A stretch of DNA of 64,000 nt from Zygnema circumcarinatum SAG 698-1b (taxonomy: Eukaryota; Plantae; Zygnematophyceae): positions 3,162,001 through 3,226,000 of the forward strand of contig CM074812.1 in the NCBI GenBank assembly GCA_037447605.1, read 5' to 3'. The notes beneath the pieces are model-generated. The model ran no database searches. It saw only the letters and a list, made by a program, of their open reading frames with translations, and had not been told where the DNA came from. Positions within the stretch are counted from its first letter, which is position 1, and the number at the start of each line of letters is the position of its first letter. This document shows positions 81-53,549 of this stretch, in pieces. A program made the position numbers and the translations under genes.

Positions 81-2728
<2,648 letters not shown>

Positions 2729-2759: not shown

Positions 2760-2970
2760 GAGGGTTTAGGTTTCTAGAGTTTAGGGTTTTAGGGATTGGG
2801 GTTTAGGGGTAAGGGTTTAGGGTTTAGGGGTGTAGGGAGTAGGGTTTCGGGTTTAGTGTTTATGGTTTAGGGTTTAGGGTTCAGGGTTTACGGTGTAGGG
2901 TGTACAGTATAGGGTTTAGGATTGAGAGCTGTGAGGGAAGACTTAGGGCTCGGGGTTTAGGTAGGGTTTA
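2760..2970 (+). repeat. Telomere-like (TTTAGGG)n array immediately upstream of the CSN7 start
   Basis: agggtttagg...ggtttagggttt repeats beginning ~30 nt from the ATG at 2728. Confidence 0.9.
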
Positions 2971-3923
2971 AGAGGGGATGAAATTTGAACAAATTTTGTT
3001 CAGAAAGGTTTTTGGATCACAGAGGGAGGGTTAAGGGTTCAGGATCTTGTGAGTTCGATGGTTCCAGGGAGATGGAAAGGCAAAAATGGTAAAGAGCAGG
3101 GAGAAAGAGGGTTGCAGAGAGAGTGAGAGCGGGGGGCGGAGAGAGGGAGGGAGGACGAGAGAAGAGAGAGAGAGGGAGAGGGAGAGAGAGGGAGGTAGGG
3201 TGGGTGAGAGGGAGAGGGTATGTGTGTACGAGAGAGAGAGAGGGAGAAGGGGGAGAGGGAAGGAGAGAGAGGGAGGTAGGGTGGGTGAGAGGGAGAGGGT
3301 GTGTGCGAGAGAGAGAGAGGGAGGGGGTGAGAGAGGGAGGGGAGAGAGAAGAGAGAGAGAGAGAGAGGGGGGGGTAGGGTGGGTGAGGGAGAGAGAGAGT
3401 GTGTGTTTGAGAGAGAAAGAGAAAGAAAGAGGGGAGAGAGAGAGAGGGGGAAATATGGTTTAGGGTTTCTCAAACGCGCGGAAGCGGTACGCGCACGTTT
3501 CAGAAGTTAGGGTTCGCAATTTTGGGCTGTGCGTCGCCCTCCGTTTTTCTGTTTTTTATTGAAAAGCCTAAAAAGGCGAAGCGGGGGCTTGGCGCACCAC
3601 GTAAACCTTACAGTCTACATTTCAAGTACTAATCAGCAACAGCCACGTGTTCGTAACTGATCCTGATGTCATGGAACAGCTCTCAACCATACAGACGTTA
3701 CGGTACGGTTATCTACAGTTTACAGGACTGTTGACATAGAACCTCACATTGTATGGGGCCCTTACTATGGAGTATCAGTCAATGGGAGTTTGTCACTTGT
3801 ACGACTGCGTACGTGGCGAATTTTCATTGGTTTTGGACTGCTGTGCCCGCATTGACCAATCAAATCTGCCACGTGCCATTCGACAGGTTAAATCCGTTCT
3901 GCGCAAAAATACGAAATATTTTT

Positions 3924-4870
3924 GGGTAGTGATATTTCCACCCCTTTTTTGGATCCAAACACCCCTTCCCGGCCGGGCAGATTTCAAAAAGGATTAAAAA
4001 CGGAAAATGTTTTTTTCACACCTTTTTGGAATCGATACCACCCTCCATCGGCAGATTTATTTCTGCGAAACAAGGAAAATGATAACCAGTCACCCCATTT
4101 GAATATCCCGCCTGCCTGAGTTTTTTTTCACGCGTGCGGTCAATCGCAGCCGTCGATTCCCTCGCAGATCGCAAATGGCAGATCACTATTTGATCGGCAG
4201 CCGGGCTCGGTCACAGCGCATGGCCACTTGCCCACGTATCCCGCCAAAGTCCTCTCAAAAGTTTTTCCGTACACATGTCGTACGGTCGCAACTTGAGGAA
4301 CCCAAAATTTCGTACATTGAGATCTTAGACCAATCAACGTTGTCCACGTCAAAAATTTAACACGTGGCAGGTGTTGATTGGCTGAAAGCTGACGATTGCA
4401 CGAGATCTCGGGCAGAAGGACGCGGGCACTCGCACGTGCGATCCGGCTTTGGCGGGACTCGTGGGCGCTTTCTATTCGCTGAGATCGAGCCCGGCTGCAG
4501 ATCGAACGGTGATCTGCAGTGGTGTGATCTGCGAGGGAATCGACAGCTGCGATTGACACACACGTGTAAAGGACGGACACCCGCGAACGATCTCGTGGCG
4601 GACGGATCTTCCGCTCCGAGCGGATTCGGGCAGGCAGATATTTCTTTTCCTCAAAAAAAAAATTCAGGGAGGCAGGATACAGTATTCAAAATGCGTTGAC
4701 GGGGTATCATTTTCCTTGGTTAGCAAAAATAAAATCAGCCGACGGAAGAAGGTGGGTATCCATTCCAAAAAGGTGTGAAAAAAGCATTTTCTGTTTTTAA
4801 TCCCTTTTGAAATCTGCCCGGCCGGGAAGGGGTGTTTGGATCCAAAAAAGGGGTGGAAATATCACTACCC
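3924..4870. mobile_element. Non-autonomous foldback/TIR DNA transposon (long TIRs, 8-bp TSD), copy 1
   Basis: Termini GGGTAGTGATATTTCCACCCC...GGGGTGGAAATATCACTACCC; ~60 bp perfect and ~200 bp imperfect inverted repeat; flanked on both sides by ATATTTTT; second copy at 51918-52767. Confidence 0.92.
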
Positions 4871-5240
4871 ATATTTTTTTGATTTTTACCGTCCGTACGG
4901 TGGGGATTACCGATGGTGTTGGCCACGTGTACCAAAGTTTTCACGTGGCGACCCGCCATTGGTGGACGTATGACCGTAGTGCTCTTATCGGGTCATCGAA
5001 GGTCCCCGTGGCGAGCCCGATTGGCCGATGCTCGACCATAGTGCGCGTTTTGGATCAACGACTCTTTGCTGTCGCAGAAGCCGAATGGGTTGTGCCCTTA
5101 GAACCTCTCCTGGATCGCCAACAAATATTGCCACGTCATCAGCGAGTCCGGCGTGGCGAGCTGTCATAGGTTCAGCGCTTCTCTCGGTAGCTTGTGTTGC
5201 GTCTTTAGGAACATTGTCGTACGGACCTTTTTGAATACCC

Positions 5241-5681
5241 TTAAACCCAAACCCTAGGAACCCTAAAACCCTCGTAATCTAATAACCCTACAACCCTAAA
5301 TTCCCAAAACTTTGAAAGCGGGAAAGTTGAAACCCCAGATTCCGAAAATAAACATCGCATAACCCCAAATCCTAGAAATCATTGAGGTTGAACCCTGAAC
5401 CCTGAACCCTGAACCCTGAACCCTGAACCCTGACCCCGGAACCCTGAACCCTGAACCCTGAACCCTAAACCCTAAACCCTAAACCCTGAACCCTGAACCC
5501 TGATCCTTATACCCTGAACCCTGATCCTTATACCCTGAACCCTGAACCCTGAACCCTGAACCCTGAACCCTGATCCTTATACCCTGAACCCTGAACCCTG
5601 AACCCTGAACCCTATACCCTGAACCCTGAACCCTGAACCCTGAACCTTCAACCCTGAACCCTCAACCCTCAACCCTGAACC

Positions 5682-5734
<53 letters not shown>

Positions 5735-5785
5735 ACCCTATCCCTATCCCTAAACCTTAAACCTTAAACCCTAAACCCTAAACCC
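5241..5785 (-). repeat. Telomere-variant array (CCCTGAA)n/(CCCTCAA)n/(CCCTAAA)n upstream of IMPACT
   Basis: Long run of aaccctgaaccctg with blocks of ccctcaa and ccctaaa, ending ~25 nt before the ATG at 5809. Confidence 0.92.
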
Positions 5786-5808
5786 TCGGCCAGCCCTCTA
5801 ACGCGAAC

Positions 5809-7056
5809 ATGAACGACGAAAATCGAATCCTTCAAGAAGAGGAGGCGGCGGTGCTCCAAGCGATCTTTGCAGAGGACTGTTCCGTTGCGGAAAACGGAAC
5901 AAGCATAGAACTGCGAGTTTTGGGCCCACATGGAAACGCGGGTACATTTCCGAAGTGTGAGCTTCCAGAATTGACGCTTCGAGTTCATTTTCCGGAAAAT
6001 TATCCGTCGGAAAGTTTGCCAGTGGTGGAGGTGGAGGCTGCATGGCTGTCTCCCTCACTGAGGGAGAGGCTGTGGGAGGGGATGGAAAGAGTGGGAGAGG
6101 AGGGAGTCGGAGAGGTGGTAGTATATAAGTGGGTTGACTGGTTGAGGGAGCAGGCATGGTTGTGGGAGGCTGGAGAGGGAGCGGGAGAGGGAGAGGGAGA
6201 GGGAGGGAGGGAGAGTGAGGGAGAAGGAAGGGGGGATGGGAGAAGCTTGGAAGAGAGAGAAGCGGAGGGAGATGGGGAAGGAGAGGAGGGAGAGGGGGAC
6301 GCCGAGACGGAGGAAGGTCGATGGGGAGAGGGAGAGTGGGAGAAAAAGAGAGAGAGGAGAGAGGAAGAGAGTGGAGGAGAGTTCTTAAGGAGACCCGGCG
6401 ATGATTCGAGTAGAGAGGTGAAGGAAGGAGAGGGAGGCTTCATGGACGAAATTTTCCTTCAAAATTTAGACGAGTCGTTGGGAATCGTGCATGGACCGCC
6501 GTTCACGGAGAGAAGGAGCACTTTTCAAGCACATTTAGCGCATGTGGCGAGTCTCGATGATGTTGAGAAGGTGATGCAGGCGTTGCTCTCCAATAGGAAA
6601 ATTGCGGGAGCGACACATAACATCATGGCGTACCGCATCACTGAAAAAAACCCAAATTCCGAAATCTCAATTCCCAAAAACCCTCATTCCGAAAGCCCAC
6701 ATTCAGATAACCCAAATCTCAAAAAACCACACTCCAAAAACTTAAATTCCAAAAACCCAAATCCAAAAAACCCAACTTCGAAAACCCCAAATTCTGAAAA
6801 CCCCAATTCGAGAAAGGGTTTTGTAGGGGTTCAGGATTATGATGATGATGGAGAGAGTGCTGCGGGAGGGAGGCTCCTGCATTTACTTCAAATCGTAGAT
6901 GCTAGAGATGTATTACTCGTGGTTTCTAGATGGTTCGGAGGCGTCCTTTTGGGGCCGGAGAGGTTCAAACACATAAACAATGCGGGGCGGCTTCTTTTGG
7001 ACTCATGTGGGTACATAGAGGGAGGGGCCAAAGGAGGCAGAGGGAAGAAGAGGTGA
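5809..7056 (+). CDS. IMPACT: IMPACT/YIH1 family protein (RWD domain + UPF0029 domain), intronless
   Basis: N-terminal RWD (QEEEAAVLQAIF...FPENYPSESLP); C-terminal ERRSTFQAH...ATHNIMAYRI...QDYDDDGESAAGGRLLHLL...VSRWFGGVLLGPERFKHINN signature. Confidence 0.93.
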   Translation: MNDENRILQEEEAAVLQAIFAEDCSVAENGTSIELRVLGPHGNAGTFPKCELPELTLRVHFPENYPSESLPVVEVEAAWLSPSLRERLWEGMERVGEEGVGEVVVYKWVDWLREQAWLWEAGEGAGEGEGEGGRESEGEGRGDGRSLEEREAEGDGEGEEGEGDAETEEGRWGEGEWEKKRERREEESGGEFLRRPGDDSSREVKEGEGGFMDEIFLQNLDESLGIVHGPPFTERRSTFQAHLAHVASLDDVEKVMQALLSNRKIAGATHNIMAYRITEKNPNSEISIPKNPHSESPHSDNPNLKKPHSKNLNSKNPNPKNPTSKTPNSENPNSRKGFVGVQDYDDDGESAAGGRLLHLLQIVDARDVLLVVSRWFGGVLLGPERFKHINNAGRLLLDSCGYIEGGAKGGRGKKR

Positions 7057-11474: not shown

Positions 11475-13578
11475 ACTCACTCTCCCCTCCTTTGGTATTC
11501 ATTTTATTTTCATAACTTTCTAAGATGAAGCAGAGATAGTCTGTCAGAAAAAGAGGGAAGAAGGGAGGGAGAGCGACAGAGGGAGAGAGAGTGGGGAAAA
11601 GAAAGGGAGAGAGGGAGGGGGAAAGGGAGGGGAAAAGGCAGGGGGAGAGGGGGGGAAGAGAGGGGAAAAGGGAGGGAGAGAGAGTGGGCGAGAGAGAGGG
11701 GAAAAGGGAGGGAGAAAGAGCGGCAAAGAGAGCGGAAAAGGACGGGAGAGTGTGTGGGGGAGAGAGAGGGGAAATGGGAGGGAGAGAGGGAGAAAGTGAG
11801 GGGAAGAGGGAGGGCGCGAGAGTGGGGGAGAGAGAGGGGAAATGGGTGGGAGAGAAAGAGTAGGAGAGAGAGGGAAAAAGGGAGGGAGATAGCGAGTGGG
11901 AAAGAGACTCAGTGGGAAGGAAAGAGAGGAGAGAGTGTGAGGAAGAGAGTTTTACTTTTGGAGGGAGACCAAGTCCCGCCTTTTCGCAGCCCATCGAATC
12001 AACAGGCGCCACGTGGCGCGCTCTCATTCGTCGAATAAGTTCCATCACTTCTTTCCATCGGATCGGCGGATCTGTAAGACACAAAAAACTGGAAATAACT
12101 GAAATGTAAATTTCCCCACACTCTCTCTTTCCCCCTCTCTTTTTCTCTCTCCCTCTCTCTCTCTTTTTCCATATCTCACTCTTTCTCTCTCTTTCACTCT
12201 CTCTCTCGTTCCCTCTCTCTTTCTCTTTCTTCCTCTCTCCTTGTCTCTCCCTTTTTCCCTCTCTCTCTTTCCCTTCTTTTTTTCCAAAAGGAATAATAAC
12301 CCACTTGAATCATATATATGCTCTTTTTGAGCTCTCGATTTTTTCTTCGGAAAAAATTCGGTCAACTTTGTAATGTTTTGTGTCTTTTTCGCCTCTCTTT
12401 CATGGAGTAAAGGAGAGGGGTTGGCTGCATCTTCAATGTCTGGGAGGGCTCCGGCCTGCATGGGGTGGGAGAAAGAGAGAGAGAGAGGGAGGGAGAGTGG
12501 ACGACGTGTGAGAGGGAGGGAGAGTGAGAGAGAGGAAGAGAGGAAGAGGGACAGAGGGAGGTAGGGAGGGACGGAGGCGGACGCAGGCAGGGAGGGAGCG
12601 GGGGGGAGGGAGGGAGAGTGAGAGAGAGACCTCGAGAGAGAGCGAGAGACGGAGAGGGAGGGGGAGGGAGAGAGGGAGAGGGAGGGGGAGGGAGAGAGCA
12701 GTAAGAAGGAAGTCAACGAGAGGGGGGAGAGAAAAAAAACTGACCGCGGGTGCGAGCAGCTCCAACGACTGTTCAAGTTTTATTTCTAAATTTAATTCCG
12801 CTTCCTTTTTCAATTTTGCCACTCCTCGCTTTCTATATGTACGGATACCTGCAGAGGTTGAGAAGAAAAAAATGGAAGAACTTATGCAAAAGTAATGAAA
12901 AAAAAAGGAAATAAATAAATAAAATAGAGAAGAATCTATCATTTAAACAATTTTTTTTGGGTAGATACACACCTTTTTGGTTAAATACAAACATAAAAAC
13001 CCTAAAATAAAATCTCACAGGCGGAAAAAGTTGTATATCTAGCCAAAAAAGGGGGCCACTTTCAAGCCTAAAAACTCTAGACCCTTACCCTTAAACCCGA
13101 GACCCTGGACCCTTAATCTTAAACCCTGAACTTAAACCCTGAACTTAAACCCGAGACCCTACCCTCAACCCTAAAACCCTTAGCCTAAAATTGAAACCTC
13201 CAACCCTAATCTCTGAACCCCACACCCTAAGCCCTAAACCCTAACCCCTAAACCCTAAGCCCTAAACCCTAACCTCCCTCTACCTCCATTCCTGCATTTG
13301 ATACAAGAACAAGTACCTGAATCCTCCACTTCCCCTCCTTTCGATACGATTGCGCTGTACTCCTTCTTAACTGCCACGTGTCCTCCATGCGCGAAGGCGC
13401 TGAACGCGGGAAGCGTGCCAGCTGGTTCGTCGACTGCGCCCGGCTCCATGGATGCCACGTGGCGCCACGTGGCACGCTCGAAGGGGTGCGCCTCCTGGGG
13501 GGCCGACACGTGGCGGTGCGAGCGCAGTCGTCGGGCGGCCATGGCGGCGAGGGAGACTCGGAGGGAAGGAGCCGCCAT
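8416..13578 (-). CDS. NTH1: Endonuclease III homolog (HhH-GPD DNA glycosylase/AP lyase with Fe-S motif), 10 exons, probable organellar transit peptide
   Basis: Exons 13578-13317, 12848-12745, 12455-12305 (LPDIED), 12071-11956 ([12 protein letters not shown]), 11340-11274 ([16 protein letters not shown]), 10597-10506, 10342-10205 (VGFYSKK...[14 protein letters not shown]), 9404-9312 ([15 protein letters not shown]), 9199-9116 ([14 protein letters not shown]), 8643-8416 ([18 protein letters not shown]...CP). All GT-AG and in phase. Confidence 0.95.
13070..13275 (-). repeat. Telomere-like array in NTH1 intron 1 (G-rich on the sense strand)
   Basis: aaaccctaaaccctaa/ccctgaa repeats on the + strand, next to the exon 1 donor. 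Confidence 0.85.
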
Positions 13579-13616
13579 GGAAAAAGCTCAAGGGTCGGAA
13601 TACCGGTATCCCCAAT

Positions 13617-14175
13617 GTAATACGATACGATATTTAATTCAATACGATATACGATAATTTAAAATATATGGTACAGATCGCTTCAAGCGGTCGGAAGGTC
13701 TGTGACACGATACGATATGATACGGTATCGTAGGGTACGATATAACAGTATCATTCCGATACGATATTGAAGCCCCATGTTTCTGACGATACGGTCATAT
13801 ACAAAAGGCCACCAGCTTTGGGAAGGCCTCCAATACGATACGATACAGTAGTACTATACGATACGATACAGTCGGTCCTTCCTATATTATTGGAAGCCCA
13901 ACTTTCACAAAATGCCGCCACCCTTGGGAAGGGCAGTCTTCCAATACGATACGATACGGTACTAAACGATACAAAACAATATGATACGATACATTTTGTC
14001 CGATATGATATTGGAAGCCCCAATTTTCTGCTTTGAAAGTATTCCGATACGATACTTGCGATACGATATTTGAATCCACCACTTCCTGACGGCAAGTCGA
14101 TGGGCCACCAAGAAAGGCAGATACGATATTGTCGATTCATTATACTGTATCGATATATTCTTCCTCTACGATATA
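13617..14175. repeat. (CGATA)n-rich degenerate repeat block with three ~110-125 bp related units
   Basis: Dense gatacgatacgat motifs; att(g)gaagcccca recurs at ~13768, ~13888 and ~14009. Confidence 0.8.
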
Positions 14176-14239
14176 TGCGTATTGACGTTTCTTTGCCAGT
14201 TACTGAAATTGCCGGCTTCCGTTGCACAGCACTGTTCAA

Positions 14240-14305: not shown

Positions 14306-14394
14306 TTCAGACAGGAGCATGGCGTTAAACACTAAACCTGAACCCTTATTTCTGCAATACCGTACGGGAGTGAAATACAGAAACGTCAAAGAAA

Positions 14395-14905
14395 ACCTAA
14401 AACCCTAAAACCCTACAACCCTAAAACCCTCAACCCTCGCACTGACAGATCCAACGGTATCGAGTATTCAGTTTCTGAGCCCTAGAGCTGGAAAATTTTG
14501 AAACCTCTGAAGGTGCAATTAGTTTAATTCCTCGAATCTGTTAATCCAAGAATGTAAAATTCAGAAAACAAAAACTTGAATGGTTCGTTTTAACCCCTGA
14601 ACCCCTGAACCCTTGGACCCTGAACGAACCTTGAATCCTAATTCCTGAACCCTGAACCCTGAACCCTGAACCCTGAACCCTGAACCCTGACCCATGAACC
14701 CTGAACCCTGAACCCTGAACCCTGAATCCTGAAACCCTAAACCCTGAATCTTTTAACCCTTTTATCCTCAACCCCGAACGCCGATCCCTGAACCCTGATC
14801 CATAACCTTTGAATCCTTAAACCCTAAACCCGAAACCCCGAATCCTGAACCTTGAACCCTGCACCACGCAAAAGCTTCCAAAGGCGTTCCTGAACCCTAA
14901 TTCTA
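14395..14905 (-). repeat. Telomere-variant (CCCTGAA/CCCTAAA)n array upstream of PIG-M
   Basis: aaccctgaaccctg runs ending ~30 nt before the ATG at 14936. Confidence 0.9.
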
Positions 14906-14935
14906 CACCCTCCGTATCCCTCCTACCCCCTCTTC

Positions 14936-17090
14936 ATGCCACGTGCCTCGCCTCCCTCTCGCCACGTGGCAACCCCCCTGCCACGTGGCCTCCTGCCGCT
15001 CCTCCTTGCCGCCGCCCTGGTCCGCCTCCTCCTATTGGTTGCCGGCGAATGGCAGGACCGCCACGTGGACGTAAAGTATACCGATATCGACTACGCGGTA
15101 TTTACGGACGGCGCACGGCTGGTCGCCACGTGGCAGTCCCCCTACGGACGGAGCACGTATCGGTACTCGCCGCTGGTGGCATACGTCATGCTGCCTGCCA
15201 CGTGGCTGCACGGGGCGTGGGGGAAGGTGCTGTTCGCAGCTGCAGGTGAGAGGGGGGTGGGTGAGGGTTCAGGGTTTAGGGTTTGGGGTTCAGAGGGTAG
15301 GGTTAGGGTTTAGGGTTTGCGGTTTGGGTTAGGTTTAGAGTTTAGGGTTTAGGGTTTTAGGGTGTAGGGTGTAGGGTTTAGGGTTAGGGTTTAGGGTTAG
15401 GGTTTAGGATTAGGGTTAGGGTTTAAGGTTTAGGGTTTAGGGTTTAGGATTTAGAGTTTAGGGTTGCAAGAGTTTCTGGTTTGGGATTTAGGGTGTATTG
15501 TTTGGGGTTTAGGGTAAGGGGCTAAGGGTTTAACGTTGGGGTTCAGGGTCTACAGTGTGGGATTTAGGGCTTTGAGGTGTGGGTTTGGGGTTGAGAATTA
15601 AATTTTTGGTTGTTGGGTTTTGAGTATTTGGGTTTGGGATTTGGGGTTCAGGGTTAAGGGTTTATGTTTTGGGGTTTAGAGTCCAGGGTTCAGGTTTTGG
15701 GTGCCGAGATAACTCATGTATCTCACTCCCTCCTCTCCCTCTCCCTCTCCCTCTCCCNNNNNNNNNNTCCCCCCCTCTCCCTCTCCCTCTCCCTCTCCCT
15801 CCAGACCTTCTCGTGGGCCTCCAGCTTTACTCGCTCCTCCGCCTGCGCCACGTGTCCCCCTCCTTCGCGTGCTTCTGTGCCGCCACGTGGCTTTTCAACC
15901 CCTTCACGTGCACTGTGGCGACACGTGGCAACTGCGAAGCGGTCGTCAGCGCCCTCCTCCTGCGCGTGCTGCTCTGCCTCTTCAAAGGTACGACTATTTC
16001 TCATCCTTTATTGATTTTTTTTTTCCTTGTTTTTTTTCCTCGTTTCTTGTTCTTGGATGACAATATCTTTCGATCAATATTTCTCATTATTGTTTATGAT
16101 CTTTGATTTTTTGATTTTCAAGTTTCCATTATTGTTTGTTGCGCATGGCCCATCTCCCTCGGAGCCTTTCCTTTCCTTTCCTTTCCTCTCCTTTCCTCTC
16201 CTCCTCCCCCATCGCGAAGTTTCGCAGTCCCTTCGTTCGTTGGCCTTTCCATCGAACCCACAAATCGAAGCGACTCACGACTTTGTTCCATGCCCAATCT
16301 GTACTATCGAAAACGTGACGTGACGTGACGTGACGTGACGTGACGTGACGTGAGTGACGTGATGATCATAGCGTGACATGACGTGACGAGACGTAAGGTG
16401 GCGTGGCCTGACATGACGTCATATAATGTCATGTCACGTCATGTCACGTCACGAGTTGTATGACGTGTCGTGTTATGGCGGAATGTGACGTGATGTGACG
16501 TGACGCGGCGTCATATGATGTCGTGTCACGCCATGTGACGTCACGAGTTGTATGACGTGTCATGTTATGGCGGAACGTGACGTGACGTGACGTGCTTTGC
16601 CAATTGCACTTATGTTTCGGAGACTAAATTTTTTTTCAAATGGAAAATTTTGTGAGGAAAGTTTTCTTTTCCTGACACGTGGCAGGCTGCTATTGGCAGG
16701 TCGACTGGTTGAAGCCTCGATGTGGTACGGAATTTTGGTCCACCTTCGAATTTATCCAATCATTTACGCGCTTCCAATTCTTTTAATTTTGAACAAAAAT
16801 TATCCCTCCAGAGCTTCGAAATCCTTGGAAAAAAAATTCAAAAGTGGGCCTCAAACTTTTTCGGCTGACCCACGGATGGCCACATCGACCACTGAGAGCG
16901 CGCCACGTCAGCAAGATGTTCAAAAAAATCAGAAGGAAAGTTTTTTTTTTGGGTCCCTCAAACGTGCTCTAAACAAAGAAAGATTTTTGTTCGGCGGAAT
17001 CTCAGGCGGAGTTTTTTTTGGGCTGACCGGATTTTTTTTTTACCTTTACGGAAGAGTACCTGTATGAGGCGCGCTGATTATCATTTGACT
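14936..17090 (+). CDS. PIGM: GPI alpha-1,4-mannosyltransferase I (PIG-M/PEANUT1), 5' half; frame breaks just before the 100-N gap
   Basis: Exons 14936-15245 (KYTDIDYAVFTDGAR...SPYGRSTYRYSPL), 15805-15987 (WLFNPFTCTVATRGNCE), 16700-~17052 (YGILVHLRIYPIIYALP...FFYLYG). Homology continues in shifted frames (EYLYEA, YHLT) up to the gap at 17107. Confidence 0.9.
15265..15700 (+). repeat. Telomere-like (TTTAGGG)n array in PIG-M intron 1
   Basis: agggtttagggttt repeats starting ~20 nt after the donor. Confidence 0.92.
16313..16595 (+). repeat. (CGTGA)n pentamer tract with internal tandem duplication in PIG-M intron 2
   Basis: acgtgacgtgacgtg runs; gtcacgagttgtatgacgtgtc..gttatggcggaa occurs twice. 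Confidence 0.85.
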
Positions 17091-17106
17091 AGCAATATGT
17101 AACTGA

Positions 17107-17206
17107 NNNNNNNNNNNNNNNNNNNNNNNNNNNNNNNNNNNNNNNNNNNNNNNNNNNNNNNNNNNNNNNNNNNNNNNNNNNNNNNNNNNNNNNNNNNNNN
17201 NNNNNN
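17107..17206. other. Scaffold gap (100 N); other large gaps at ~35682-35808 and ~62240-62359, plus several 10-N gaps inside GA tracts
   Basis: Runs of n in the sequence. Confidence 0.98.
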
Positions 17207-17499
17207 GCACTGCGACTAAACACAAACTTAAGTAAAGTTTCTTTAACTAGTCACTTAGTCAGACAAGTTAGTTAAAAATTTCAAATAGTTAGCTAGTTCT
17301 ATGTTGACAGTTAGTCAGTCTAGTCGTTAGTTGTCAGTTTAAATTTAGAAAAACAAAAATTGAGTTGCGAGTGGTTTCGATACTTGATGCATTTGAAATG
17401 TTGCCTTCAGCAATTTTAGGGTTACGGAAATGTTTTTTGGGGCGGAATTTTGGTGGGTTCATTCCTGACAGTAATTGAAAGGTCGATGTTTCCAAACAA

Positions 17500-17960
17500 C
17501 CCTAAAAACCTTAGAGACCCTAGAAACCCTAACGAGCCTCGAAGCCTAAAACCCTAAAGACCCTCCAAACCTAAAACTCTAAGACCCTCAAAACCCTAAA
17601 GACCCTCCAAACCTAAAACCCTAAAGACCCTGAAAGCCTAAAACCCTAAAGACCCTCCAAACCCTAAAACCCTGACGACCCTCCAAACCTAAAAACCTAA
17701 AGACCCTCAAAATGCAAAAGACCCTCCAAACCTAAATCCCTAAGGACCCTGAAAACCCTAAAGACCCTAAAGACCCTAAAAACCCTAAAAACCCTAAAAA
17801 CCCTCGAAGCCTAAAACCCTAAAGACCCTCCAAACCTAGAACCCTAGAGGCCCTCCAAACCTAAAACCCAAAGACCCTCAAAACCCTAAAGACTCTCGAA
17901 ACCCTAAAGACTATCAAAACCCTAAAGACCCTCCAAACCTAAAACCCGAGAAGTCCCTAG
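17500..17960 (-). repeat. Higher-order telomere-derived repeat (AAAACCCTAAAGACCCTCCAAACCT-like units)
   Basis: ccctccaaacc recurs about 8 times, interleaved with aaaccctaaaga. Confidence 0.85.
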
Positions 17961-19861
17961 AAATCGAAACGCAACATTTTTAGTTTTTATGCGGCGAAAC
18001 ATTTTTATTTCGTGTCCCGAGAGATAATCCTCGAGTTTTTGGAACGCTTCAAGCCACGTGGCGCAATTTCATTGGCTGCAACTTCTATTCACTTTTTGGG
18101 TACTTTTATCAGCCGTACGGACAATTGGACATGCCAATATATCGTAATATCGCTAACTAGAATCCAACATTTCCTGAATATCGTCAACGATATTCCGATA
18201 TATCGTCATATCCCAATCGCCTAGGGGTTGTTTCACCTGTACGACTGCTGCCACGTGACATGCACCGACATTTTCCTTCAATAAAGAATGTCGGCAATCG
18301 ACAAATGTCGGTGCGGCGTCATTGGCCGTACGGACACAGTCATGGGAAGTCTTCCAGTCCATCCGCCCTTTAGTGCCACGTGACAGGACCGGCATGTGTG
18401 AAAGCCATCACCCATTGGCTGAACCTCACATCCATTCACGTTCCGCTTTGACAGGTGCACACTCAATCTCCCATTGGCTGCGGCTTTTGTCCACTCGGGT
18501 TTCGTCATTACACGTGTAAGAAACCCCTCCTATTGGTTATGGTCGCCCTCGCACTTGCGACAGCCCCCTCCCATTGGTGACACCCCCAAAAGGCGAGCGG
18601 TCCGGGCCATGGCTCGCAGCGGATCGCTCGCGGTCACCCAGCCAGAGAATTGACACGGCGTGACCTGACGTGATGAGACGAGACGTGATAAACACGTGTG
18701 ATCGGTGGATAACCGCGTTTCACGGACGAGTGTCGCGTCATTTATTGTAGCGTGGATGGATCTTGGCCTTCTATGACACGTGTGAATTATGGTATTTTTC
18801 ACGATAAGATCTGCGATGTGACAGGGACTGGTGGCGGGGAGGGCAGCCACGTCGCCAGAAGGCATGAGATGGCGACACGTGGCTGAAACATCCATAGTTA
18901 CGACAAATTCTGCCTGACCCGGGCGGGAAATTTTGTCGTTTTCTGTCGCTCTGCGTCCTTTTCTGTCAGAAACGACAGAACTATTTTGGTGACGTGTTTA
19001 ATTTCGGTTGGACAGTTACTGGCGTTGTGGTGTCACGTGGCACTGATGGGAAATTTCAGCCCAAAATACTTCTGAAAAATTTTGTCTGGAACGTTTTTAT
19101 CTGCCCGTTGTGACGGGCAGGTCATCCACGAATGCGAGTGCCTTATTCCGAGCGGGCAGTCCAAAACAAAAGACTTTGTGACCCAAACCTTCGATCCGGG
19201 CAGTACAAAAATAAACTTTCTCCTTCCTGCCCGTTCTCGTTACGAACAACCATTCTGCCCAGAAAATCCTCTATTTTCATTATTGATCCCAAAAAACATT
19301 GTTTTAACCTGCCCGTACACCCTGCCCGCCGACAAAAGTTCCACCTGCCATTTATCCTCCGCCACGTGTCACGCGGACCTCCAAGGAAAGCCCTTTCCCT
19401 TTTTCCCTTCGGCCGAGTCGCCTGGCGACGAGTTTTTGGTCGCAGAGCAGTCGCACAGAGTCAAAGGGCCATTTCCATTGGTTGCAATGGTCGCAGATTC
19501 CACGTACCACGTGTTTATTGGTCGAATGGCGTCGCCGTGCGACAGCGGCGCAGGCGGAGCCAATAATGGAACCTACGACGCTTTTGGACTTTCCACGACG
19601 CATCGCGAAAAGTAGAGATAGGGAGAGGGAGAAGAGGAAGACAGAGAGAGAGAGACAGCTGGAGAGAGAGAGAGAGCAGCAGAGTGACACAGAGCGGGAG
19701 AGAGACAGAGAGAGCGGGAGAGAGACAGCGGCAGAACAGGGGGAGAAGGAGAGAGACAAGAAAGCACGTGAGTGGGAGTTTAAGAGAGAGAGAGAGAGAG
19801 AGAGATGGGCGCCAAAGCGGGAGAGAGAGTACAGACGGCAGGAGGGAAGGCGAGCGAGAGG

Positions 19862-21892: not shown

Positions 21893-25949
<4,057 letters not shown>

Positions 25950-25974
25950 GCCGGGGGGGGGGGAAAGAACTTTA

Positions 25975-26392
25975 AGGTATAGGGTTTAGGGTTCAGGGTT
26001 AAGGGTTTAAGGGGGTTTAAGGTTTAGGATTTAGAGCTTAGGAATGGGGTTAGGTTTGGGGTTTACGGTTTAGGATTCAAAGTTTATGGTCTAGGGTTTA
26101 GGGTTCAGAGTTCAGAGTTTAGGGTATTCATTCAGGGTTTTGGGGTTTAGGATTAGGGTTTAGAGTTTAGGGAATATGGTTCAGGGATTGTTGTTTAGGG
26201 TTTAAGATTCAGGGTTAAGGTTTTAGGGTCTAGGGTTTAGGGTTCAGGCTTCAGACTTTAGGGCTTAGCATTCAGGGTTTGGGTTTTAGGGTTAGGGTCT
26301 AGAGTCTAGGATTTAGGGTTCTGGGTTTGGGGCTAGGGTTTAGAGTTTAAGGTTTAGGGTGTAGGGTTAGGAATTAGGGTTTAGGGCTTCAA
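25975..26392 (+). repeat. Telomere-like (TTTAGGG/TTCAGGG)n array upstream of SAYSD1
   Basis: agggtttagggttcaggg repeats beginning ~25 nt from the ATG at 25949. Confidence 0.9.
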
Positions 26393-27312
26393 GGTTCCGT
26401 GTACAGTTTCAGTTCAGTCATAAGAAAGCAGCCAATGAAAGCTCGCCACGTATACACTTCTCATCGTACGGAAGCATTCCTTGCAGACTTGGCGAGCGGT
26501 CAAGATTGGTCAAGATTGGTCGACTAGACGGTCGACGCAATTCAAACCGAACTTGACTAAGCTTGACCAGGTCGTCAGGTCGGCGTTCAAGCATTCCGTA
26601 CATGCTGGAAGTTTCCGAGAATGTAAGCCGCGTGTCGTGACAATGAAGCGTGTCCGTTTGGTGTACGGATTGTCTGACCGTTCGATTTTGGGCAGGTCGT
26701 AAACTTCGCTTGTGATTGGTCGACATGGCCGAGTGACTCACACGCGTGGAAAGGGGTTTTACGATTGGCGGAGACTCTGGATGGGAAAGGTAGGAAACTT
26801 TCTGTAGGTACCGTTGTTTAGGCCGTAAAGTACGGGCGGATGTCCTGAGCTTCTTCAAAAATTATCTTCAGGATCCATCGGACGGTGTAGATGAAATAAG
26901 ATATCAAATCGGATATTTTATGACCGTCCGATCTAAAGATTTCTTTTTTTGAATCACTGAAAACGTTTTAGTTCTGCCCATTACGGTTCGGGCTGCCCGA
27001 AAAACAGGAAACAAAAAGAAATTCGTCCTTCCGGAAGCTTCTAGTGGGCACCTGAGGCGGGCCTATAAATAAAAAACTGGGTTTCAGTTTTGTTTTGGAA
27101 ACTAGTTTTTGATTCCGAAGGGGGCACTTGCATTCCTAAACTCTCAAAATAAACCTCCTAAAAAATATCTTTTTCTTTTGGTATTTCTCAGCTTTTTGGG
27201 ACTCTCAGGGTTTCAAGAATCTCTTTCGGTTGGCTGAATAAGTCTTAAGACTTTACATAAGTTTTAAAGGTCTAGGGTTTCGGACTAGGGTTTCGGGTTT
27301 AAGCTTTTAGCC

Positions 27313-29320
27313 ATGGCGACTGCAGGATCGTACGGCAGCCATGTGCGTACGGATTGGAACGCAGAAGCGCTCAAGAATCTGCACAGCCTCTCGCCGAGAG
27401 TGCAAAAGCACCTACAAAAGGTTCGGCCAGGGGGTAGGGTTTAGGGTTCAGGGTTTTGGGTTTTTGCATTAGGTTTTAGGGTTAGGGTTTCGGGTTTAGG
27501 GTATGGGATTAGTGTTTAGGGTTTAGGTTAAGAGAATAGGGTTTCAGGTTTTTGGTTTAGGGTACGGAATTACGGTTTAGGGTTTTGCGTGTTTAGGTTA
27601 GGTTTTAGGGCTGCGGGATTAGGGTTTTTGGTTTCATGGCGTAGGGTTCTAGGGTTTAGGGTTTTGGGGTTGGATGATTTTAGGATTTTTTTAATGCAGC
27701 TCTGCCTTCCGCTCTTGCCGAAACCATCGAATCAGGGTCTGAAAATAATTGTAGGGTTTGAGAAGTACGGAGAAGCGGAGCGTTTTGAAACCCTAAAATT
27801 TTCTAAATTATTTTTTTTTTTTTTGGTGAATGTTTGCTTGCAGGTTTACTTGACCTTGGCGGGCGCTCTGTTCGTTTCCACGGTCGGAATTTTTTTCGAT
27901 CTCGTTTTCCACGTGGGCGGGCTGCTCTCCACTTTAGGGTTTCTCGGAGCCGCGTTTTGGCTCAATGGAACTCCCGCCGTGCCCAGTCTGGAGGTAGAGG
28001 TTTATTTTCATTTATTTGAAAATAAAATAATTGCAAAAAAAGAAATGCAAAAGAAAAAATCAATATTTGATTAAGATCATTTCAAGTATTATAACGTGTT
28101 TTGATCTTGGGTTTTTAGGTTTTTTTGTGGTATTTGACTTTATCAAGGTGTCTGGATGTAGCCAAAAAAGGTCTGAAAAACGAACTATAACTTGATCACT
28201 TCACTTAATTGAGGAGGCATCATATTGCAGAGCTGGAAGATGTGACTTTATCGAGCTGTTTGAATGCGGCTTAAAAACGCTGGAGTAAAGTGATAGCTCT
28301 TGATCTCTTTACTTTATCGAGGTTGGTTTTTTGGATGTAGGAAGTTTTAGAGAACGTGACTTTAAAGCGATGTGTGGCTGTTTGCTTACTTGCAGGGAAA
28401 GCGGTTGAAGCTGTTTGCCTTGGCGGCGTTTCTGCAGGGCCTGTCAGTGGGGCCCTTAGTGAACCTTGCGCTGGCTGTGAATTCAGGGTAAGAGGAGAGA
28501 GAGGGAGGGGGAGAGGGAGGGAGAGAGAGAGAGAAGAGGAAGAGAGAGGAAGAGAGAGTGAGAGAGCGTTTGAGAAAGTGGGAGGGAGGTGGAGCGGGGA
28601 GAGAGGGGAGAGTGGGGAAGTGAGGAAGTGGAGAGATATGGGGAGAGGACGGAGAGAGAGGGAGCGGGGAGAGGGAATGGGAGAACAAGGGGGGGGGGTG
28701 GGGAGAGTGGGCGGTTAGAGGGGAAGGGCGAGGTGGCGAGGGGGGAGAGAGAGTCATTGAGAGGGAGAGAGAGCGGTCTGTGAGAGTGAGGGAGCTTTTC
28801 ATCATGAAGTAAACGCCCTGCATGCGAGACACAAAAGGAAGATACAGAGGTAGAGCGTGCTCACTCAGGAGGGATAGCGAGTGAGAGCGAGAGAGAGGAG
28901 AGCGAGAGAGGCGAGGGAGAGGAGAGAGAGAGAGGAGAGAGAGAGGAGAGGGAGAGAAGAGAGAGAGAGAAAAACAAGATCCATCATTCATAGTGCTCAC
29001 AAATTACATCCGCTCTCTGTTGCAGAGCAATCGCAACTGCCCTTTTGATCACAGGAGTGGTCTTCGCATGCTTTTCCGGAGCAGCGATTCTGGCAAAAAG
29101 ACGCGAATTTTTGTTTCTTGGAGGGATCATTTCCTCCGCAGTGAGCGCAATGGTCATGATGCGGCTCGCCATGCATTTGTTCGGAGCCTCGGCGGGGGCC
29201 TTTCAATTGGAGGTGAGGGGGGGGAAAGAGAGAGAGAGAGAGAAAACGAGAGAGTGAGAGGGCGAGGTAGACAGAGGGGCAGGGAGGGAGAGAGGGAGAG
29301 GGAGGGAGAAGGGTAGCGAG

Positions 29321-41475: not shown

Positions 41476-41730
41476 GAGAGAGGGGAATAGAGAGAGGAAG
41501 GCAGAGGGATATAGAGAGAGAGGGTAAGAGAGAGGAGAGAGAGGGGGGTAAGAAAGAAGGAGCTCACCTTCCCTTCCAGCGCCATGGCTCATCTCCATCT
41601 CCAAACCCTAAATATTGCCTTTTTATGTTATAGTTCCGTTCTACCGGAAGGAAACCCTCCACCCGCCACGTGGCACAAGCTAAGGGGAGGTCTGAGCTCT
41701 ATTTGTCAGCTCGGGGGAGGGAGAGGCAGG

Positions 41731-41842
41731 GGCTCCACGTGGCAGCTCGGGAAGGACTCCACGTGGCAAGTCGGGAAGGGCTCCACGTGACGACTGGGGG
41801 AGTGCTCCACGTGGCAGCTCGGGAAGGACTCCACGTGGCAAT
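41731..41842. repeat. Tandem array of five 24-bp units, each carrying a G-box/ABRE-like (C)CACGTG(GC)
   Basis: ccacgt starts at 41735, 41759, 41783, 41807, 41831 (exact 24-bp period); unit ~GGCTCCACGTGGCAGCTCGGGAAG. Confidence 0.9.
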
Positions 41843-42554
41843 CGCTCACTCTCTCTCGCGGAGCGCCTAACGGCTCAATTTCCTACCCTAAGGAGCTTCC
41901 ATGTCCGTCAGTTCGCTCACAGTTCAGCGTTACAGCTCCGTCCAATTCAATGCAGTTGTCAAAAGGGGTGATCTATGTGACCTGCGTATCGAACCGTATC
42001 GTATCGTATCGTATCGTATCGAGTTTGTGGAGTGTCGTACTGGTCTTGACTGTCATATCTATCTTGGGCTCGTGGCCATCTCGCTCTGCCTCAACATGGT
42101 TCAAGGCATGAGTGAGCATGTTCGAGCGCACAATGTTGAACATGAGGAAGTATGGCACTCTCAAGCATGCCTATGTAGCACAACTATGTTCTAGCGCACA
42201 CCACGCACACATAACAATGTTTTGTTGAACATATGTAAAAAGAGCACATGCATGCATGCGTCCAATGCAAACAGAGATTTGGATTGGAATTGACATCGCA
42301 ATGTCAATGTTTTCAAGTATTCAAACTCCCCATTGTTTGTAAGGGCCCAAGTCCCTCCAAAAATCCCTATGGCCTTTGGGAGTGGCTGTGTTTTTCGTGG
42401 TTCTCCATGTAGTTGTCGTTGTTGTTGATGTCAATCTCATGGCACCTCTAATTGCAGTAGAGAAAGGGAAGTGGCATTGATCTCACGATGGCGATGATGC
42501 CATCAAATGTACATGGTCAAAATCAGCACATACATGTCTTTCTGTGTGTTAATG

Positions 42555-51917: not shown

Positions 51918-52767
51918 GGGTAGTGATATTTCCACCCCTTTTTTGGATCCAAACACCCCTTCCCGGCCGGGCAGATTTCAAAAGGGATTAAAAACAGAAA
52001 ATGCTTTTCTCACACCGTTTTGGAATCGATACCCACCTTCGTCCGTCGGCTGATTTTATTTTTGCTAACCAAGGAAAATGATACCCCGTCACCGCATTTT
52101 GAATACTGTATCCCGCCTCCCTGATTTGTTTTTTTGAGGGAAAGAAATATCTGCCTGCCCGAATCCGCTCGGAGCGGAAGATCCGTCCTCCACGAGATCG
52201 TTCGCGGGTGTCCGTCCTTCACACGTGTGTGTCAATCGCAGCTGTCGATTCCCTCGTAGATCGCACCTCTGCAGATCACCGTTCGATCTGCAGCCGGGCT
52301 CGATCTCAGTGAATGGATAGCGCCCACGAGTCCCGTCAAAGCCGGAAAATTTTGATTGTTCCAAGGTCTCAATGTACGAAATTCTGGGTTCCTCACGTTG
52401 CGACCGTACGACATTTGTACGGACAAACTTTTGAGACGACTTTGGCGGGGTACGTGGGCACTTGCCATTCGCTGTGACCGAGCCCGGCTGCAGATCAAAT
52501 AGTGATCTGCCGAGTTGCGATCTGCTAGGGAATCGACGGCTGCGATGACCGCACGCGTGAAAAAAAATTCAGGTAGGCGGGATATTCAAAATGGGTTGAC
52601 GGGTTATCATTTTCCTTGTTTCGCGAAAATAAAATCTGCCGATGGAGGGTGGGTATCGATTCCAAAAAGGTGTGAAAAAAGCATTTTCCCTTTTTAATCC
52701 TTTTTGAAATCTGCCCGGCCGGGAAGGGGTGTTTGGATCCAAAAAAGGGGTGGAAATATCACTACCC
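51918..52767. mobile_element. Non-autonomous foldback/TIR DNA transposon, copy 2 (opposite orientation to copy 1)
   Basis: Same GGGTAGTGATATTTCC...ACTACCC termini; flanked on both sides by TTGTTAAA (8-bp TSD); interior is the reverse complement of the interior of 3924-4870. Confidence 0.92.
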
Positions 52768-53549
52768 TTGTTAAAAAATCGAAACTGCCACGTCATTGAT
52801 AAGAGATGTACGGTGAACCCAAGCGCCGTGGTTCTAGCGAACCATGCCTGCCATGTAGACAAGATTCGGCAAGATTAGCAAGTGGCCCAGGTCACGACAG
52901 GGGTCTGAGCCACGTCGCCCAAATCCCAATCCTACATGTCATGCCACGTGGCGAGTCCACCATCGCATGAACGCTGGGCCTCAGCCGTGGCCCATCCAAC
53001 GGACGAAATTTGATCGGATTCGATTTGGTTTGCACGATCTGAGTTGGATTCTGCCGAATCTAGCAGTGCGGCATTGTACGGCTGCGGCTGCCGGTCGACG
53101 GCCACCTAAACAATGTTTTGCTGCCGCCCGTATGAGGCCCATCGTCTCTCTCTCACCCTCCATACCGCTACTTCTCTCTCCCCTCCATCCTCGCCTCCTT
53201 CTCTAACCATGGATCCCCCTGCCAGCCCCTTCTCCCGAGCCTTCCCTTCCCAAGCCTCTCCTAGCGCCGTGTTGATCCTAGGCGCAAACTTTACTTCATG
53301 CCTTTCTTCTATTGTCCCTATGTCCTCGTCGTCGCGGCCAGCTCCTCGTTGTTCCCATGTTGTTGTTGTTCCTGGACATGGCCATTTCATGCCATCGCCG
53401 TGGTCAGGTCAATGCCTATTCTTTGTCCTGTAGTGACAAGAATGGATCAATGCGCGAACGTGACTAAGCTCTAGTCACCACCTCGTCCAGTTCTAGTCAT
53501 CGACGTTGCGGCAGTAATACTGAGAACGGTCCTCCATTCGATGACATTA

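What the first reader, a model, noticed from the sequence alone, without database searches (positions are those of the whole stretch)
14395..15700. First exon bracketed by two telomere-like arrays in inverted, outward-facing (mini-chromosome-like) orientation: PIG-M
Seen: PIG-M exon 1 (14936-15245) has ~500 bp of (CCCTGAA/CCCTAAA)n ending ~30 nt before the ATG and ~430 bp of (TTTAGGG)n starting ~20 nt after the donor. The arrangement is 5'-(C-rich)n-exon-(G-rich)n-3', the polarity of the two ends of a linear chromosome. Established: single telo-boxes (AAACCCTA) occur in plant promoters and 5'UTRs and are bound by TRB/SMH Myb proteins, which can recruit PRC2. Inference: here the telo-box has expanded into paired polar arrays that may define the promoter/first-exon chromatin island (TRB scaffolds, nucleosome exclusion, G4/i-motif or R-loop formation). 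Paired inverted arrays could also fold into a cruciform or loop, or be targets for telomerase healing.
Basis: partly seen in the sequence, partly recalled or inferred. Interest (0 to 1): 0.75.

Follow-up and report, generated by a model that had tools for sequence, protein, structure and literature searches.

The report
Telomere-like repeat arrays flanking first exons
The first exon of an alga's PIG-M gene really does sit between two telomere-like repeat arrays pointing outward like chromosome ends, and nearby genes follow the same orientation rule, but the arrays look like fast-evolving local repeats rather than anything to do with chromosome ends.

Summary
PIG-M exon 1 (14936-15245, +) has a degenerate (CCCTGAA)n array upstream and a (TTTAGGG)n array starting 12-18 nt after its splice donor. 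The polarity is that of chromosome ends.

It is not unique. All eight arrays in this window that abut a first exon follow one rule: C-strand on the sense strand before the ATG (CSN7, IMPACT, PIG-M, SAYSD1), G-strand on the sense strand in intron 1 (NTH, PIG-M, SAYSD1, BI-1). The six arrays not used to frame the rule fit 6/6 (p about 0.016).

The two PIG-M arrays are independent. They have different dominant units and their own higher-order repeats. Their arms are only 70-79% complementary, in many registers. Two Closterium orthologues keep the same intron but have no arrays.

Best reading: expanded telo-box-type minisatellites at gene 5' ends, oriented by transcription direction. This parallels sense-strand AAACCCTA telo boxes in plant 5' UTRs and the G-over-C strand bias (GC skew) downstream of human promoters. 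A cruciform, telomerase healing or excision has no support. Function and transcription start site are untested.

The scan had already noted similar arrays elsewhere in this genome (s1-343950, s1-556450, s1-332364, s1-358317) and in this window (s1-406505).

The parts
14392..14437 (+). Short near-perfect AAACCCTA (telo-box) block, C-strand on the sense strand, about 500 nt before the PIG-M ATG
   Evidence: TRF period 8, 4.9 copies, 90% matches; sequence
14585..14871 (+). Main upstream array, degenerate (CCCTGAA)n, C-strand on the PIG-M sense strand
   Evidence: TRF 14595-14865, period 7, 38.3 copies, 74%. Dominant unit TTCAGGG read on the G-strand. 32 C3+ runs and 4 G-quadruplex (G4) motifs on the - strand
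14936..15245 (+). PIG-M exon 1 (ATG to phase-1 donor), with five CCACGTGG palindromes
   Evidence: PDB GPI mannosyltransferase 1 E=2e-18; tblastn; CCACGTGG positions
15246..15804 (+). PIG-M intron 1. Position and phase are shared with Closterium
   Evidence: Donor GTGAGA and acceptor CAG read; same intron position in L001
15258..15702 (+). Intron-1 array, degenerate (TTTAGGG)n, G-strand on the sense strand, starting 12-18 nt after the donor
   Evidence: TRF 15264-15702, period 7, 63.7 copies, 67%; 81-bp higher-order unit at 15264-15465 with 83% matches. 46 G3+ runs and 6 G4 motifs on the + strand
15716..15802 (+). CT-rich (CTCTCC)n tract before the intron-1 acceptor, holding a 10-N assembly gap
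15805..15987 (+). PIG-M exon 2
   Evidence: tblastn 15813-15953, 64% identity to the Closterium protein
16700..17060 (+). PIG-M exon 3 (start approximate). The gene breaks off at the 100-N gap 17107-17206
   Evidence: Pfam PF05007 E=8e-9; tblastn
2761..2933 (-). Comparator A2: array ending 33 nt before the CSN7 ATG (2728, - strand), C-strand on the gene's sense strand
   Evidence: TRF; sequence; CSN7 exon 1 Pfam PF22061 E=7e-9
5219..5790 (+). Comparator A3: (CCCTGAA)n array ending 22 nt before the IMPACT ATG (5809), C-strand sense. Same layout as the PIG-M upstream zone (short AAACCCTA block, spacer, long array)
   Evidence: TRF 5389-5786, 57 copies, 88%; sequence; RWD+Impact homologues
13072..13274 (-). 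Comparator A4: array in intron 1 of the endonuclease III (NTH) gene (- strand), G-strand sense, starting 45 nt after the donor at 13316
   Evidence: exon 1 joins exon 2 in frame (phase 1); HhH Pfam hit on a downstream exon
25530..25845 (-). Comparator A8: array about 26 nt after the putative SAYSD1 exon-1 donor (- strand), G-strand sense
   Evidence: SAYSvFN exon on the - strand, Pfam E=1e-10
25965..26396 (-). Comparator A9: array ending 22 nt before the putative SAYSD1 ATG (25949, - strand), C-strand sense
   Evidence: TRF 25971-26386, 60 copies, 65%; sequence
27435..27693 (+). Comparator A10: array in BI-1 intron 1, G-strand sense, starting 14 nt after the donor at 27421
   Evidence: BI-1 downstream exon Pfam PF01027 E=4e-13
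663..880 (-). Exception A1: hexamer-type array in an internal CSN7 intron, C-strand on the sense strand, abutting the donor
17499..17950 (.). A7: 18-bp-period C-strand array beyond the scaffold gap; gene context unassigned

Best explanation
The two arrays are separate interstitial telomere-like minisatellites: telo-box-type seeds that expanded in place. One lies in the leader or promoter just before the PIG-M start codon. The other lies at the start of intron 1. In this alga such arrays pile up at gene 5' ends and grow until they meet constrained sequence (start-codon context, splice donor).

Their orientation follows the direction of transcription. The C-strand (AAACCCT/CCCTGAA) is on the sense strand before the ATG, and the G-strand (TTTAGGG) is on the sense strand in intron 1. 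A gene that has both arrays therefore looks like a miniature chromosome, as a by-product.

Shown here: the arrays, their polarity, their recurrence in the window, their independence from each other, and their absence in Closterium.

Inferred: the cause of the polarity. I think the most likely cause is a filter or bias tied to transcription. Three ideas fit. (1) G-quadruplex-forming RNA is tolerated in a spliced-out intron but not in a 5' leader. (2) The TTTAGGG sense gives a U/G-rich intron start. (3) Expansion is favoured where the G-rich strand is the non-template strand.
For: - Arrays and polarity.
- Independent origin: the dominant unit is TTCAGGG upstream and TTTAGGG in the intron. Each array has its own higher-order period (an 81-bp unit in the intron array). 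Inverted matches are only 70-79% complementary and occur in many registers, as expected for any two opposite heptamer arrays.
- The exon is ancestral host sequence. Its intron position and phase are shared with Closterium sp. NIES-64.
- No arrays at the orthologous loci of two Closterium species.
- Recurrence with one rule: 4 of 4 arrays before an ATG are C-strand sense (CSN7, IMPACT, PIG-M, SAYSD1) and 4 of 4 intron-1 arrays are G-strand sense (NTH, PIG-M, SAYSD1, BI-1). The six arrays not used to frame the rule give 6/6, p = 1/64.
- The arrays hug the exon: 12-45 nt after donors and 22-37 nt before ATGs. For NTH, a 200-nt array in a 1245-nt intron starts 45 nt in (about 4% by chance). For BI-1 the figure is about 7%.
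- Known parallels: AAACCCTA telo boxes are enriched on the sense strand of plant 5' UTRs, together with microsatellites, as a gradient along transcription (PMC3022908). [quoted passage not shown]
Against: - The sample is small: eight arrays, all within 28 kb of one window.
- The gene models were built by hand, and SAYSD1 exon 1 (24 codons) has no homology support.
- No transcript data could be found for this species. Three protein searches returned no own-species protein. So the TSS is unknown, and it is open whether the upstream array is promoter, 5' UTR or a leader intron.
- One array in an internal CSN7 intron is C-strand sense and also abuts its donor, so the G-sense intron rule is not general.
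- Two to three G-sense units lie just before the BI-1 ATG (27272-27300).
- Absence in Closterium (about 60% protein identity) says little about constraint among close relatives.
Confidence: 0.55

Rival explanations
1. Selected 5' chromatin architecture. The outward-facing arrays are a functional module around the promoter and first-exon island. Transcription away from the island in either direction would give G-rich RNA on a C-rich template (as for TERRA, the telomere-repeat RNA), so R-loops or G-quadruplexes could form. Or the arrays could be platforms for TRB/Myb telomere-repeat-binding proteins that set the boundaries of the active 5' domain.
For: - 8 of 8 consistent polarity, and tight apposition to the exon-1 borders.
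- The G-rich strand is the non-template strand on both sides of the island. There are 6 G4 motifs on the + strand in the intron array and 4 on the - strand upstream.
- The islands between arrays carry G-box palindromes.
- GC-skew promoters in human are a precedent.
- Earlier notes report TRB-type and RAP1 genes in this genome (s1-332364, s1-549314; not checked here).
Against: - No arrays at the same exon in two Closterium species.
- The arrays are degenerate (62-88% matches) with locus-specific variants, which suggests drift.
- No arrays at all in 28-64 kb of the window, although genes lie there.
- The genes involved share no functional class.
- No chromatin, R-loop or binding data exist.
Confidence: 0.2
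2. Coincidence. Two ordinary repeat arrays, of a kind very common in this genome, happen to flank this exon in opposite orientation. The polarity means nothing.
For: - Telomere-like arrays are very frequent in this genome (10 arrays in this window).
- Earlier follow-ups called them ordinary intron fillers or gene-front repeats (s1-343950, s1-556450, s1-332364).
- For one pair, a C-then-G order has a 1 in 4 chance.
- An exception exists in an internal intron (A1).
Against: - Six further arrays next to first exons all fit the rule (p about 0.016).
- The arrays start closer to donors than random placement predicts (about 4% and 7% for NTH and BI-1).
Confidence: 0.15
3. RNA-level hairpin. If transcription starts upstream of the C-strand array, the pre-mRNA carries (CCCUGAA)n, then exon 1, then (UUUAGGG)n. 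These can pair, with G.U wobble, into a long duplex that loops out exon 1. That could affect splicing or feed small-RNA production.
For: - Predicted RNA duplex between 14585-14871 and 15258-15702 is -338.6 kcal/mol, against -5.5 for the same-polarity control.
- A CCAAT-N9-CCACG promoter-type element lies on the far side of the SAYSD1 upstream array (26432). This is compatible with that array being transcribed.
Against: - The TSS is unknown.
- The pyrimidine-rich stretch just before the PIG-M ATG could itself hold the TSS.
- One-sided cases (IMPACT, CSN7, NTH, BI-1) cannot form such a hairpin but show the same orientation.
- Any two opposite arrays would give a large duplex energy.
Confidence: 0.05
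4. One structural event: a palindromic duplication, a foldback or TIR transposon with telomere-like ends, or a DNA cruciform.
For: Opposite-oriented arrays flank a 386-bp core. Notes elsewhere in the genome mention foldback elements and MITEs in telomere-like arrays (s1-553999, s1-378418; not checked).
Against: - Arms are 70-79% complementary in many registers, with no single mirror alignment and 455 nt or more between them.
- The dominant units differ.
- The core is a conserved host exon with an ancestral intron position.
- Spacer sequences beside different arrays are unrelated.
Confidence: 0.03
5. Telomerase-related origin or fate: the exon fragment was healed at both ends by telomerase, or is excised as a linear mini-chromosome.
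For: Only the polarity itself. A telomerase-plus-recombination model was proposed for single telo boxes (PMC3022908).
Against: - Healing of one break and rejoining would give G-strand then C-strand (head to head), the opposite order.
- The two sides use different variants (TTCAGGG against TTTAGGG), and each array has its own higher-order units that point to local slippage or unequal exchange.
- The locus is internal to a long scaffold, between ordinary genes.
Confidence: 0.02

Closest known systems
Plant telo box (short interstitial telomere motif AAACCCTA) in promoters and 5' UTRs
   Same: Same sequence and same orientation (AAACCCTA on the sense strand) just before the coding start. In plants the motif co-distributes with microsatellites at gene 5' ends (PMC3022908).
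   Different: Here there are 150-570-bp degenerate arrays, not 1-2 units. The genes are not translation-apparatus genes. A partner array of opposite sense sits in intron 1. Position relative to the TSS is unknown.
GC-skew (R-loop-prone) promoters of human CpG-island genes
   Same: [quoted passage not shown]
   Different: Here the skew is carried by discrete telomere-like minisatellites, not by diffuse composition. R-loops have not been measured, and the organism is an alga.
Interstitial telomeric sequences (ITS) of vertebrates and plants
   Same: Degenerate telomere-type repeats at internal sites, prone to length change.
   Different: Fusion-type ITS are head to head (G-strand then C-strand). 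Short ITS inserted at break repair are single arrays. Neither is known to flank first exons with a fixed sense.
Intronic G-run splicing enhancers near 5' splice sites (vertebrates; from my own knowledge)
   Same: GGG runs on the sense strand within tens of nt of the donor.
   Different: Here there are hundreds of nt of repeat. Other donors in this window lack G runs, and one array next to a donor is C-strand sense.
Exons flanked by inverted repeats that pair in pre-mRNA (for example Alu pairs driving circular RNAs; from my own knowledge)
   Same: Complementary sequences on either side of an exon.
   Different: A first exon has no upstream acceptor for back-splicing. Co-transcription of the upstream array is unproven.

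Membership tests
Plant telo-box promoter element | AAACCCTA motif on the sense strand in the 5' flank or 5' UTR | tested here: met
   14392-14437 and 14585-14899 read AAACCCTA/CCCTGAA on the PIG-M sense strand. The same holds for IMPACT, CSN7 and SAYSD1.
Plant telo-box promoter element | Located within about -50 to +50 of the transcription start site | not testable with these tools
   No transcript or TSS data were found. No own-species proteins or contigs were returned.
Plant telo-box promoter element | Paired with a site II (TGGGCY) or TEF box; genes of the translation apparatus | tested here: not met
   The nearest TGGGCY upstream of PIG-M is at 14101, about 290 nt before the first telo-box block. 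None lies next to the arrays. The genes are PIG-M, IMPACT, CSN7 and SAYSD1.
True telomere or healed chromosome end | Terminal position with homogeneous canonical repeats | tested here: not met
   The arrays are internal, with unique genes on both sides, and show 62-88% matches with mixed variants. The window lies about 3 Mb into its scaffold.
Fusion-type (head-to-head) interstitial telomeric site | G-strand array directly followed by C-strand array | tested here: not met
   The order is C-strand, 386-bp exon core, G-strand.
Cruciform-forming palindrome or foldback element | Long, near-perfect inverted repeat with a short spacer | tested here: not met
   Best arms are 34-90 nt at 70-86% complementarity, with 455-956 nt between arms and many registers.
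GC-skew R-loop promoter class | Positive GC skew on the sense strand from the TSS into intron 1 | tested here: met
   Skew rises from -0.35 at the exon start to +0.93 in the intron array.
GC-skew R-loop promoter class | R-loop formation and an unmethylated, H3K4me3-marked state | not testable with these tools
   This needs DRIP-seq, bisulfite and ChIP data.

The most novel reading that the evidence does not exclude
In this streptophyte alga, telomere-like arrays are laid out genome-wide with a fixed outward polarity around promoter and first-exon islands: C-strand sense upstream, G-strand sense in intron 1. They would act as a strand-specific 5' boundary system (R-loop or G-quadruplex formation, or TRB/RAP1-type protein platforms). 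That would be an expanded, polar form of the plant telo box, and would link telomere-binding proteins to gene 5' domains before land plants arose.
Probability: 0.18. Interest if true: 0.75.

Novelty: new variant of a known kind. Interest (0 to 1): 0.45.

Why it matters
If the orientation rule holds genome-wide, it would show that telomere-type repeats in a close algal relative of land plants are shaped by transcription direction at gene 5' ends. It would also give a natural, exaggerated system for asking three things: what telo boxes do, how strand-asymmetric repeats arise at promoters, and whether telomere-repeat-binding proteins mark gene starts. If the rule does not hold, the locus is one more pair of common repeats.

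Tried and rejected
1. Palindromic duplication or cruciform. The inverted-repeat search gave only 70-86% arms in many registers, and the unit spectra differ. Rejected.
2. Shared mobile element in the upstream zones of IMPACT and PIG-M. The layout is similar, but the spacers do not align. Rejected.
3. Transcript and TSS evidence. An exact look-up of the IMPACT ORF found nothing. Word searches with PIG-M exon 1, the Closterium PIG-M and the IMPACT ORF returned no protein from this species. The HMMER search of representatives gave at most 68% identity. So no RNA-derived contigs could be reached.
4. The rest of PIG-M. tblastn with 289 proteins found nothing beyond exon 3. The gene is cut by the scaffold gap, so array A7 could not be assigned to a gene.
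5. Species identity. A literature search for the Closterium assembly accession, and a search for telomere repeats in zygnematophyte genome papers, gave nothing useful.
6. Notes from other windows were searched for orientation data. They confirm that such arrays are common but give no usable polarity counts.
7. Procedure. Spliced exons were searched one by one by reference.
8. One Pfam query for exon 2 was given out of frame and is uninformative. Exon 2 rests on tblastn.
Full report
**What is there**

The window comes from a streptophyte green alga, according to earlier notes of this scan. In agreement, the nearest PIG-M proteins are from Closterium, at about 60% identity.

Window 14936-15244 translates into an open 103-residue N-terminus. 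It matches solved GPI mannosyltransferase 1 chains over their residues 5-89 (E=2e-18). It also gave 698 hits at E<=1e-10 in the HMMER library search. The full-length top hits used for tblastn also align to exons 2 and 3, and the Closterium hit P0033 carries the PIG-M Pfam domain. tblastn places exon 2 at 15805-15987 and exon 3 from about 16700. Exon 3 hits Pfam PF05007.

Exon 1 ends in phase 1 at a GTGAGA donor (15246). The same intron position and phase are present in Closterium sp. NIES-64. Exons were searched one at a time by reference.

**The arrays**

- Upstream, the repeat zone is composite. It holds a near-perfect AAACCCTA block (14392-14437) and a 147-bp non-repeat spacer. The main array follows (TRF 14595-14865, period 7, 38.3 copies, 74% matches, unit CCCTGAA). 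A last unit ends 37 nt before the ATG.
- Downstream, G-rich sequence begins right after the donor. TRF calls 15264-15702 (63.7 copies, 67% matches), with an 81-bp higher-order unit in its first 200 bp.
- GC skew swings from about -0.5 to +0.9 across the exon.
- No gap lies between the arrays and the exon.

**Are the two arrays one event?**

No.

- Read on the G-strand, the upstream array is mainly TTCAGGG. The intron array is mainly TTTAGGG/TTAGGG.
- Each array has its own higher-order structure.
- The inverted-repeat search gives dozens of overlapping arm pairs of 34-90 nt at 70-86% complementarity, 455-956 nt apart. Any two opposite heptamer arrays would give this. There is no unique mirror alignment.
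- The core between the arrays is an ancestral host exon.

This excludes a palindromic duplication, a foldback transposon and a realistic DNA cruciform.

**Recurrence and polarity**

I mapped all telomere-like arrays in the window and worked out the adjacent genes.

| Array | Window position | Gene (strand) | Position relative to the gene | Sense-strand reading |
|---|---|---|---|---|
| A2 | 2761-2933 | CSN7 (-), ATG 2728, Pfam PF22061 E=7e-9 | Ends 33 nt before the ATG | C-strand |
| A3 | 5219-5790 | IMPACT (+), ATG 5809, RWD+Impact homologues | Ends 22 nt before the ATG | C-strand |
| A4 | 13072-13274 | Endonuclease III / NTH (-), exon 1 13578-13317 joins exon 2 in frame | Starts 45 nt into intron 1 | G-strand |
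| A5, A6 | 14392-14899, 15258-15702 | PIG-M (+) | Upstream of the ATG, and in intron 1 | C-strand, then G-strand |
| A9, A8 | 25965-26396, 25530-25845 | SAYSD1 (-), putative exon 1 25949-25878, SAYSvFN exon Pfam E=1e-10 | Ends 22 nt before the ATG, and starts about 26 nt after the donor | C-strand, then G-strand (a second full bracket) |
| A10 | 27435-27693 | BI-1 (+), ATG 27313, donor 27421, Pfam PF01027 E=4e-13 on a later exon | Starts 14 nt after the donor | G-strand |

The tally is 4 of 4 arrays before an ATG in C-strand sense, and 4 of 4 intron-1 arrays in G-strand sense. Leaving out the PIG-M pair that suggested the rule, 6 of 6 fit (p = 1/64 under random orientation).

The arrays also start closer to donors than chance placement predicts. 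The figure is about 4% for NTH (a 200-nt array in a 1245-nt intron) and about 7% for BI-1.

Exceptions and gaps:

- A1 (663-880) lies in an internal CSN7 intron, abuts its donor and is C-strand sense.
- Two to three G-sense units sit before the BI-1 ATG.
- A7 (17499-17950) lies beyond a 100-N gap and cannot be assigned.
- No array of 100 bp or more lies in 28-64 kb, although genes are there, for example a protein kinase.

**Comparison with relatives**

The PIG-M loci of Closterium sp. NIES-64 (L001) and NIES-68 (L003) keep the exon and intron structure. They have no telomere-like arrays within several kb. At this evolutionary distance the arrays are therefore not part of the conserved gene architecture. 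Closer relatives could not be reached. None of the protein searches returned a protein from this species, so I found no transcript evidence and the TSS is unknown.

**How it most likely works**

The arrays are best read as expanded telo-box-type minisatellites at gene 5' ends, with orientation tied to the direction of transcription.

Two published patterns have the same sign.

[quoted passage not shown] The cause of the polarity here is inference. Three ideas are compatible and none is proven.

- A G-quadruplex-forming (UUUAGGG)n would be harmful in a leader but harmless in a spliced intron. The intron array has 46 G3+ runs and 6 canonical G4 motifs on the sense strand.
- The TTTAGGG sense gives a U/G-rich intron start.
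- Repeat expansion may be favoured where the G-rich strand is non-template.

The chromosome-like appearance is then a by-product of two one-sided rules meeting at one exon.

**Rivals**

- A selected chromatin, R-loop or TRB-platform architecture is not excluded. It is the most interesting reading. It fits the 8 of 8 polarity and the G-box-rich islands between arrays. It has no direct support, and it is weakened by array degeneracy, by the absence in Closterium and by gene starts without arrays.
- Pure coincidence is disfavoured by the 6 of 6 test, but the sample is small and comes from one region.
- An RNA hairpin between the two arrays is energetically easy (-338.6 kcal/mol against -5.5 for the same-polarity control). 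It needs the upstream array to be transcribed, which is unknown. One-sided cases show the same orientation without a partner array.
- Telomerase healing or mini-chromosome excision has only the polarity in its favour. Healing and rejoining of one break would give the opposite order.

**Relation to earlier notes of this scan**

The scan had already recorded telomere-like arrays in first introns and before start codons of other genes in this genome (s1-343950, s1-556450, s1-332364). It had also recorded an inverted bracket around an internal exon (s1-358317) and the second bracket in this window (s1-406505). Follow-ups judged the arrays to be ordinary fast-growing repeats.

My work agrees on their nature. 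It adds a testable orientation rule relative to first exons, checked on eight arrays here.

**Verdict**

The arrangement recurs and looks non-random in polarity. The chromosome-end analogy is superficial. It is a new variant of known kinds (telo box and interstitial telomeric repeats, promoter strand skew), of moderate interest until a genome-wide tally and TSS data are available.

Noticed in passing
window 17035-17206: PIG-M breaks off after exon 3. Two apparent frameshifts lie in the last 60 nt before a 100-N scaffold gap, and the C-terminal half of the protein is nowhere in the window. This is probably a contig-end error or a misjoin.
   Followed up: partly
window 14962-15198; 13455-13465; 41660-41840: The G-box palindrome CCACGTGG occurs 21 times against about 0.9 expected. 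Five copies lie inside PIG-M exon 1 in all three reading frames. Two lie in NTH exon 1. Six tandem CTCCACGTGGCA units form a non-coding cluster at 41.7 kb.
   Followed up: partly
window 6645-6815 (inside ORF 5809-7053): A telomere-like 15-bp-period array (AAAACCCA...) lies in frame inside the IMPACT ORF and reads as an Asn/Pro/Lys/Ser-rich tract. A GA-rich array at 6160-6250 reads as a Glu/Gly tract. Whether they are translated or spliced out is unknown.
   Followed up: no
window 26432-26454 and 18057-18079: The CCAAT-N9-CCACG composite element lies just outside the SAYSD1 upstream array, on the side away from the ATG. A reverse copy lies about 100 nt beyond array A7. If it is a proximal promoter element, the SAYSD1 upstream array would be transcribed.
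   Followed up: partly
window 16313-16594 and 288-388: Tandem arrays built from ACGTG/GTCAC(G) units (periods 5, 10, 41, 53, 92) lie in PIG-M intron 2 and at the left end of the window. This is another repeat family based on an ACGT core.
   Followed up: no
window 13600-14200; 18130-18220; 41990-42020: Intergenic stretches are full of ATACGATACGAT-type motifs. They occur next to several promoter-like regions.
   Followed up: no
window 3740-5231 and 51991-52874: Repeated, partly inverted segments share ORF fragments (for example ...ISTPFLDPNTPSRPGRFQKGLK...). This is probably a dispersed transposable element. One copy sits just upstream of the IMPACT array.
   Followed up: no
window 1-28000 versus 28001-64000: All ten telomere-like arrays of 100 bp or more lie in the first 28 kb and none in the remaining 36 kb, so the arrays are regionally clustered.
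   Followed up: no
L001 and L003 (Closterium sp. NIES-64 and NIES-68): In both Closterium species PIG-M lies just downstream of a ribosomal protein S6e gene on the same strand. In the window its upstream neighbour is a divergent endonuclease III gene, so synteny is not kept.
   Followed up: no
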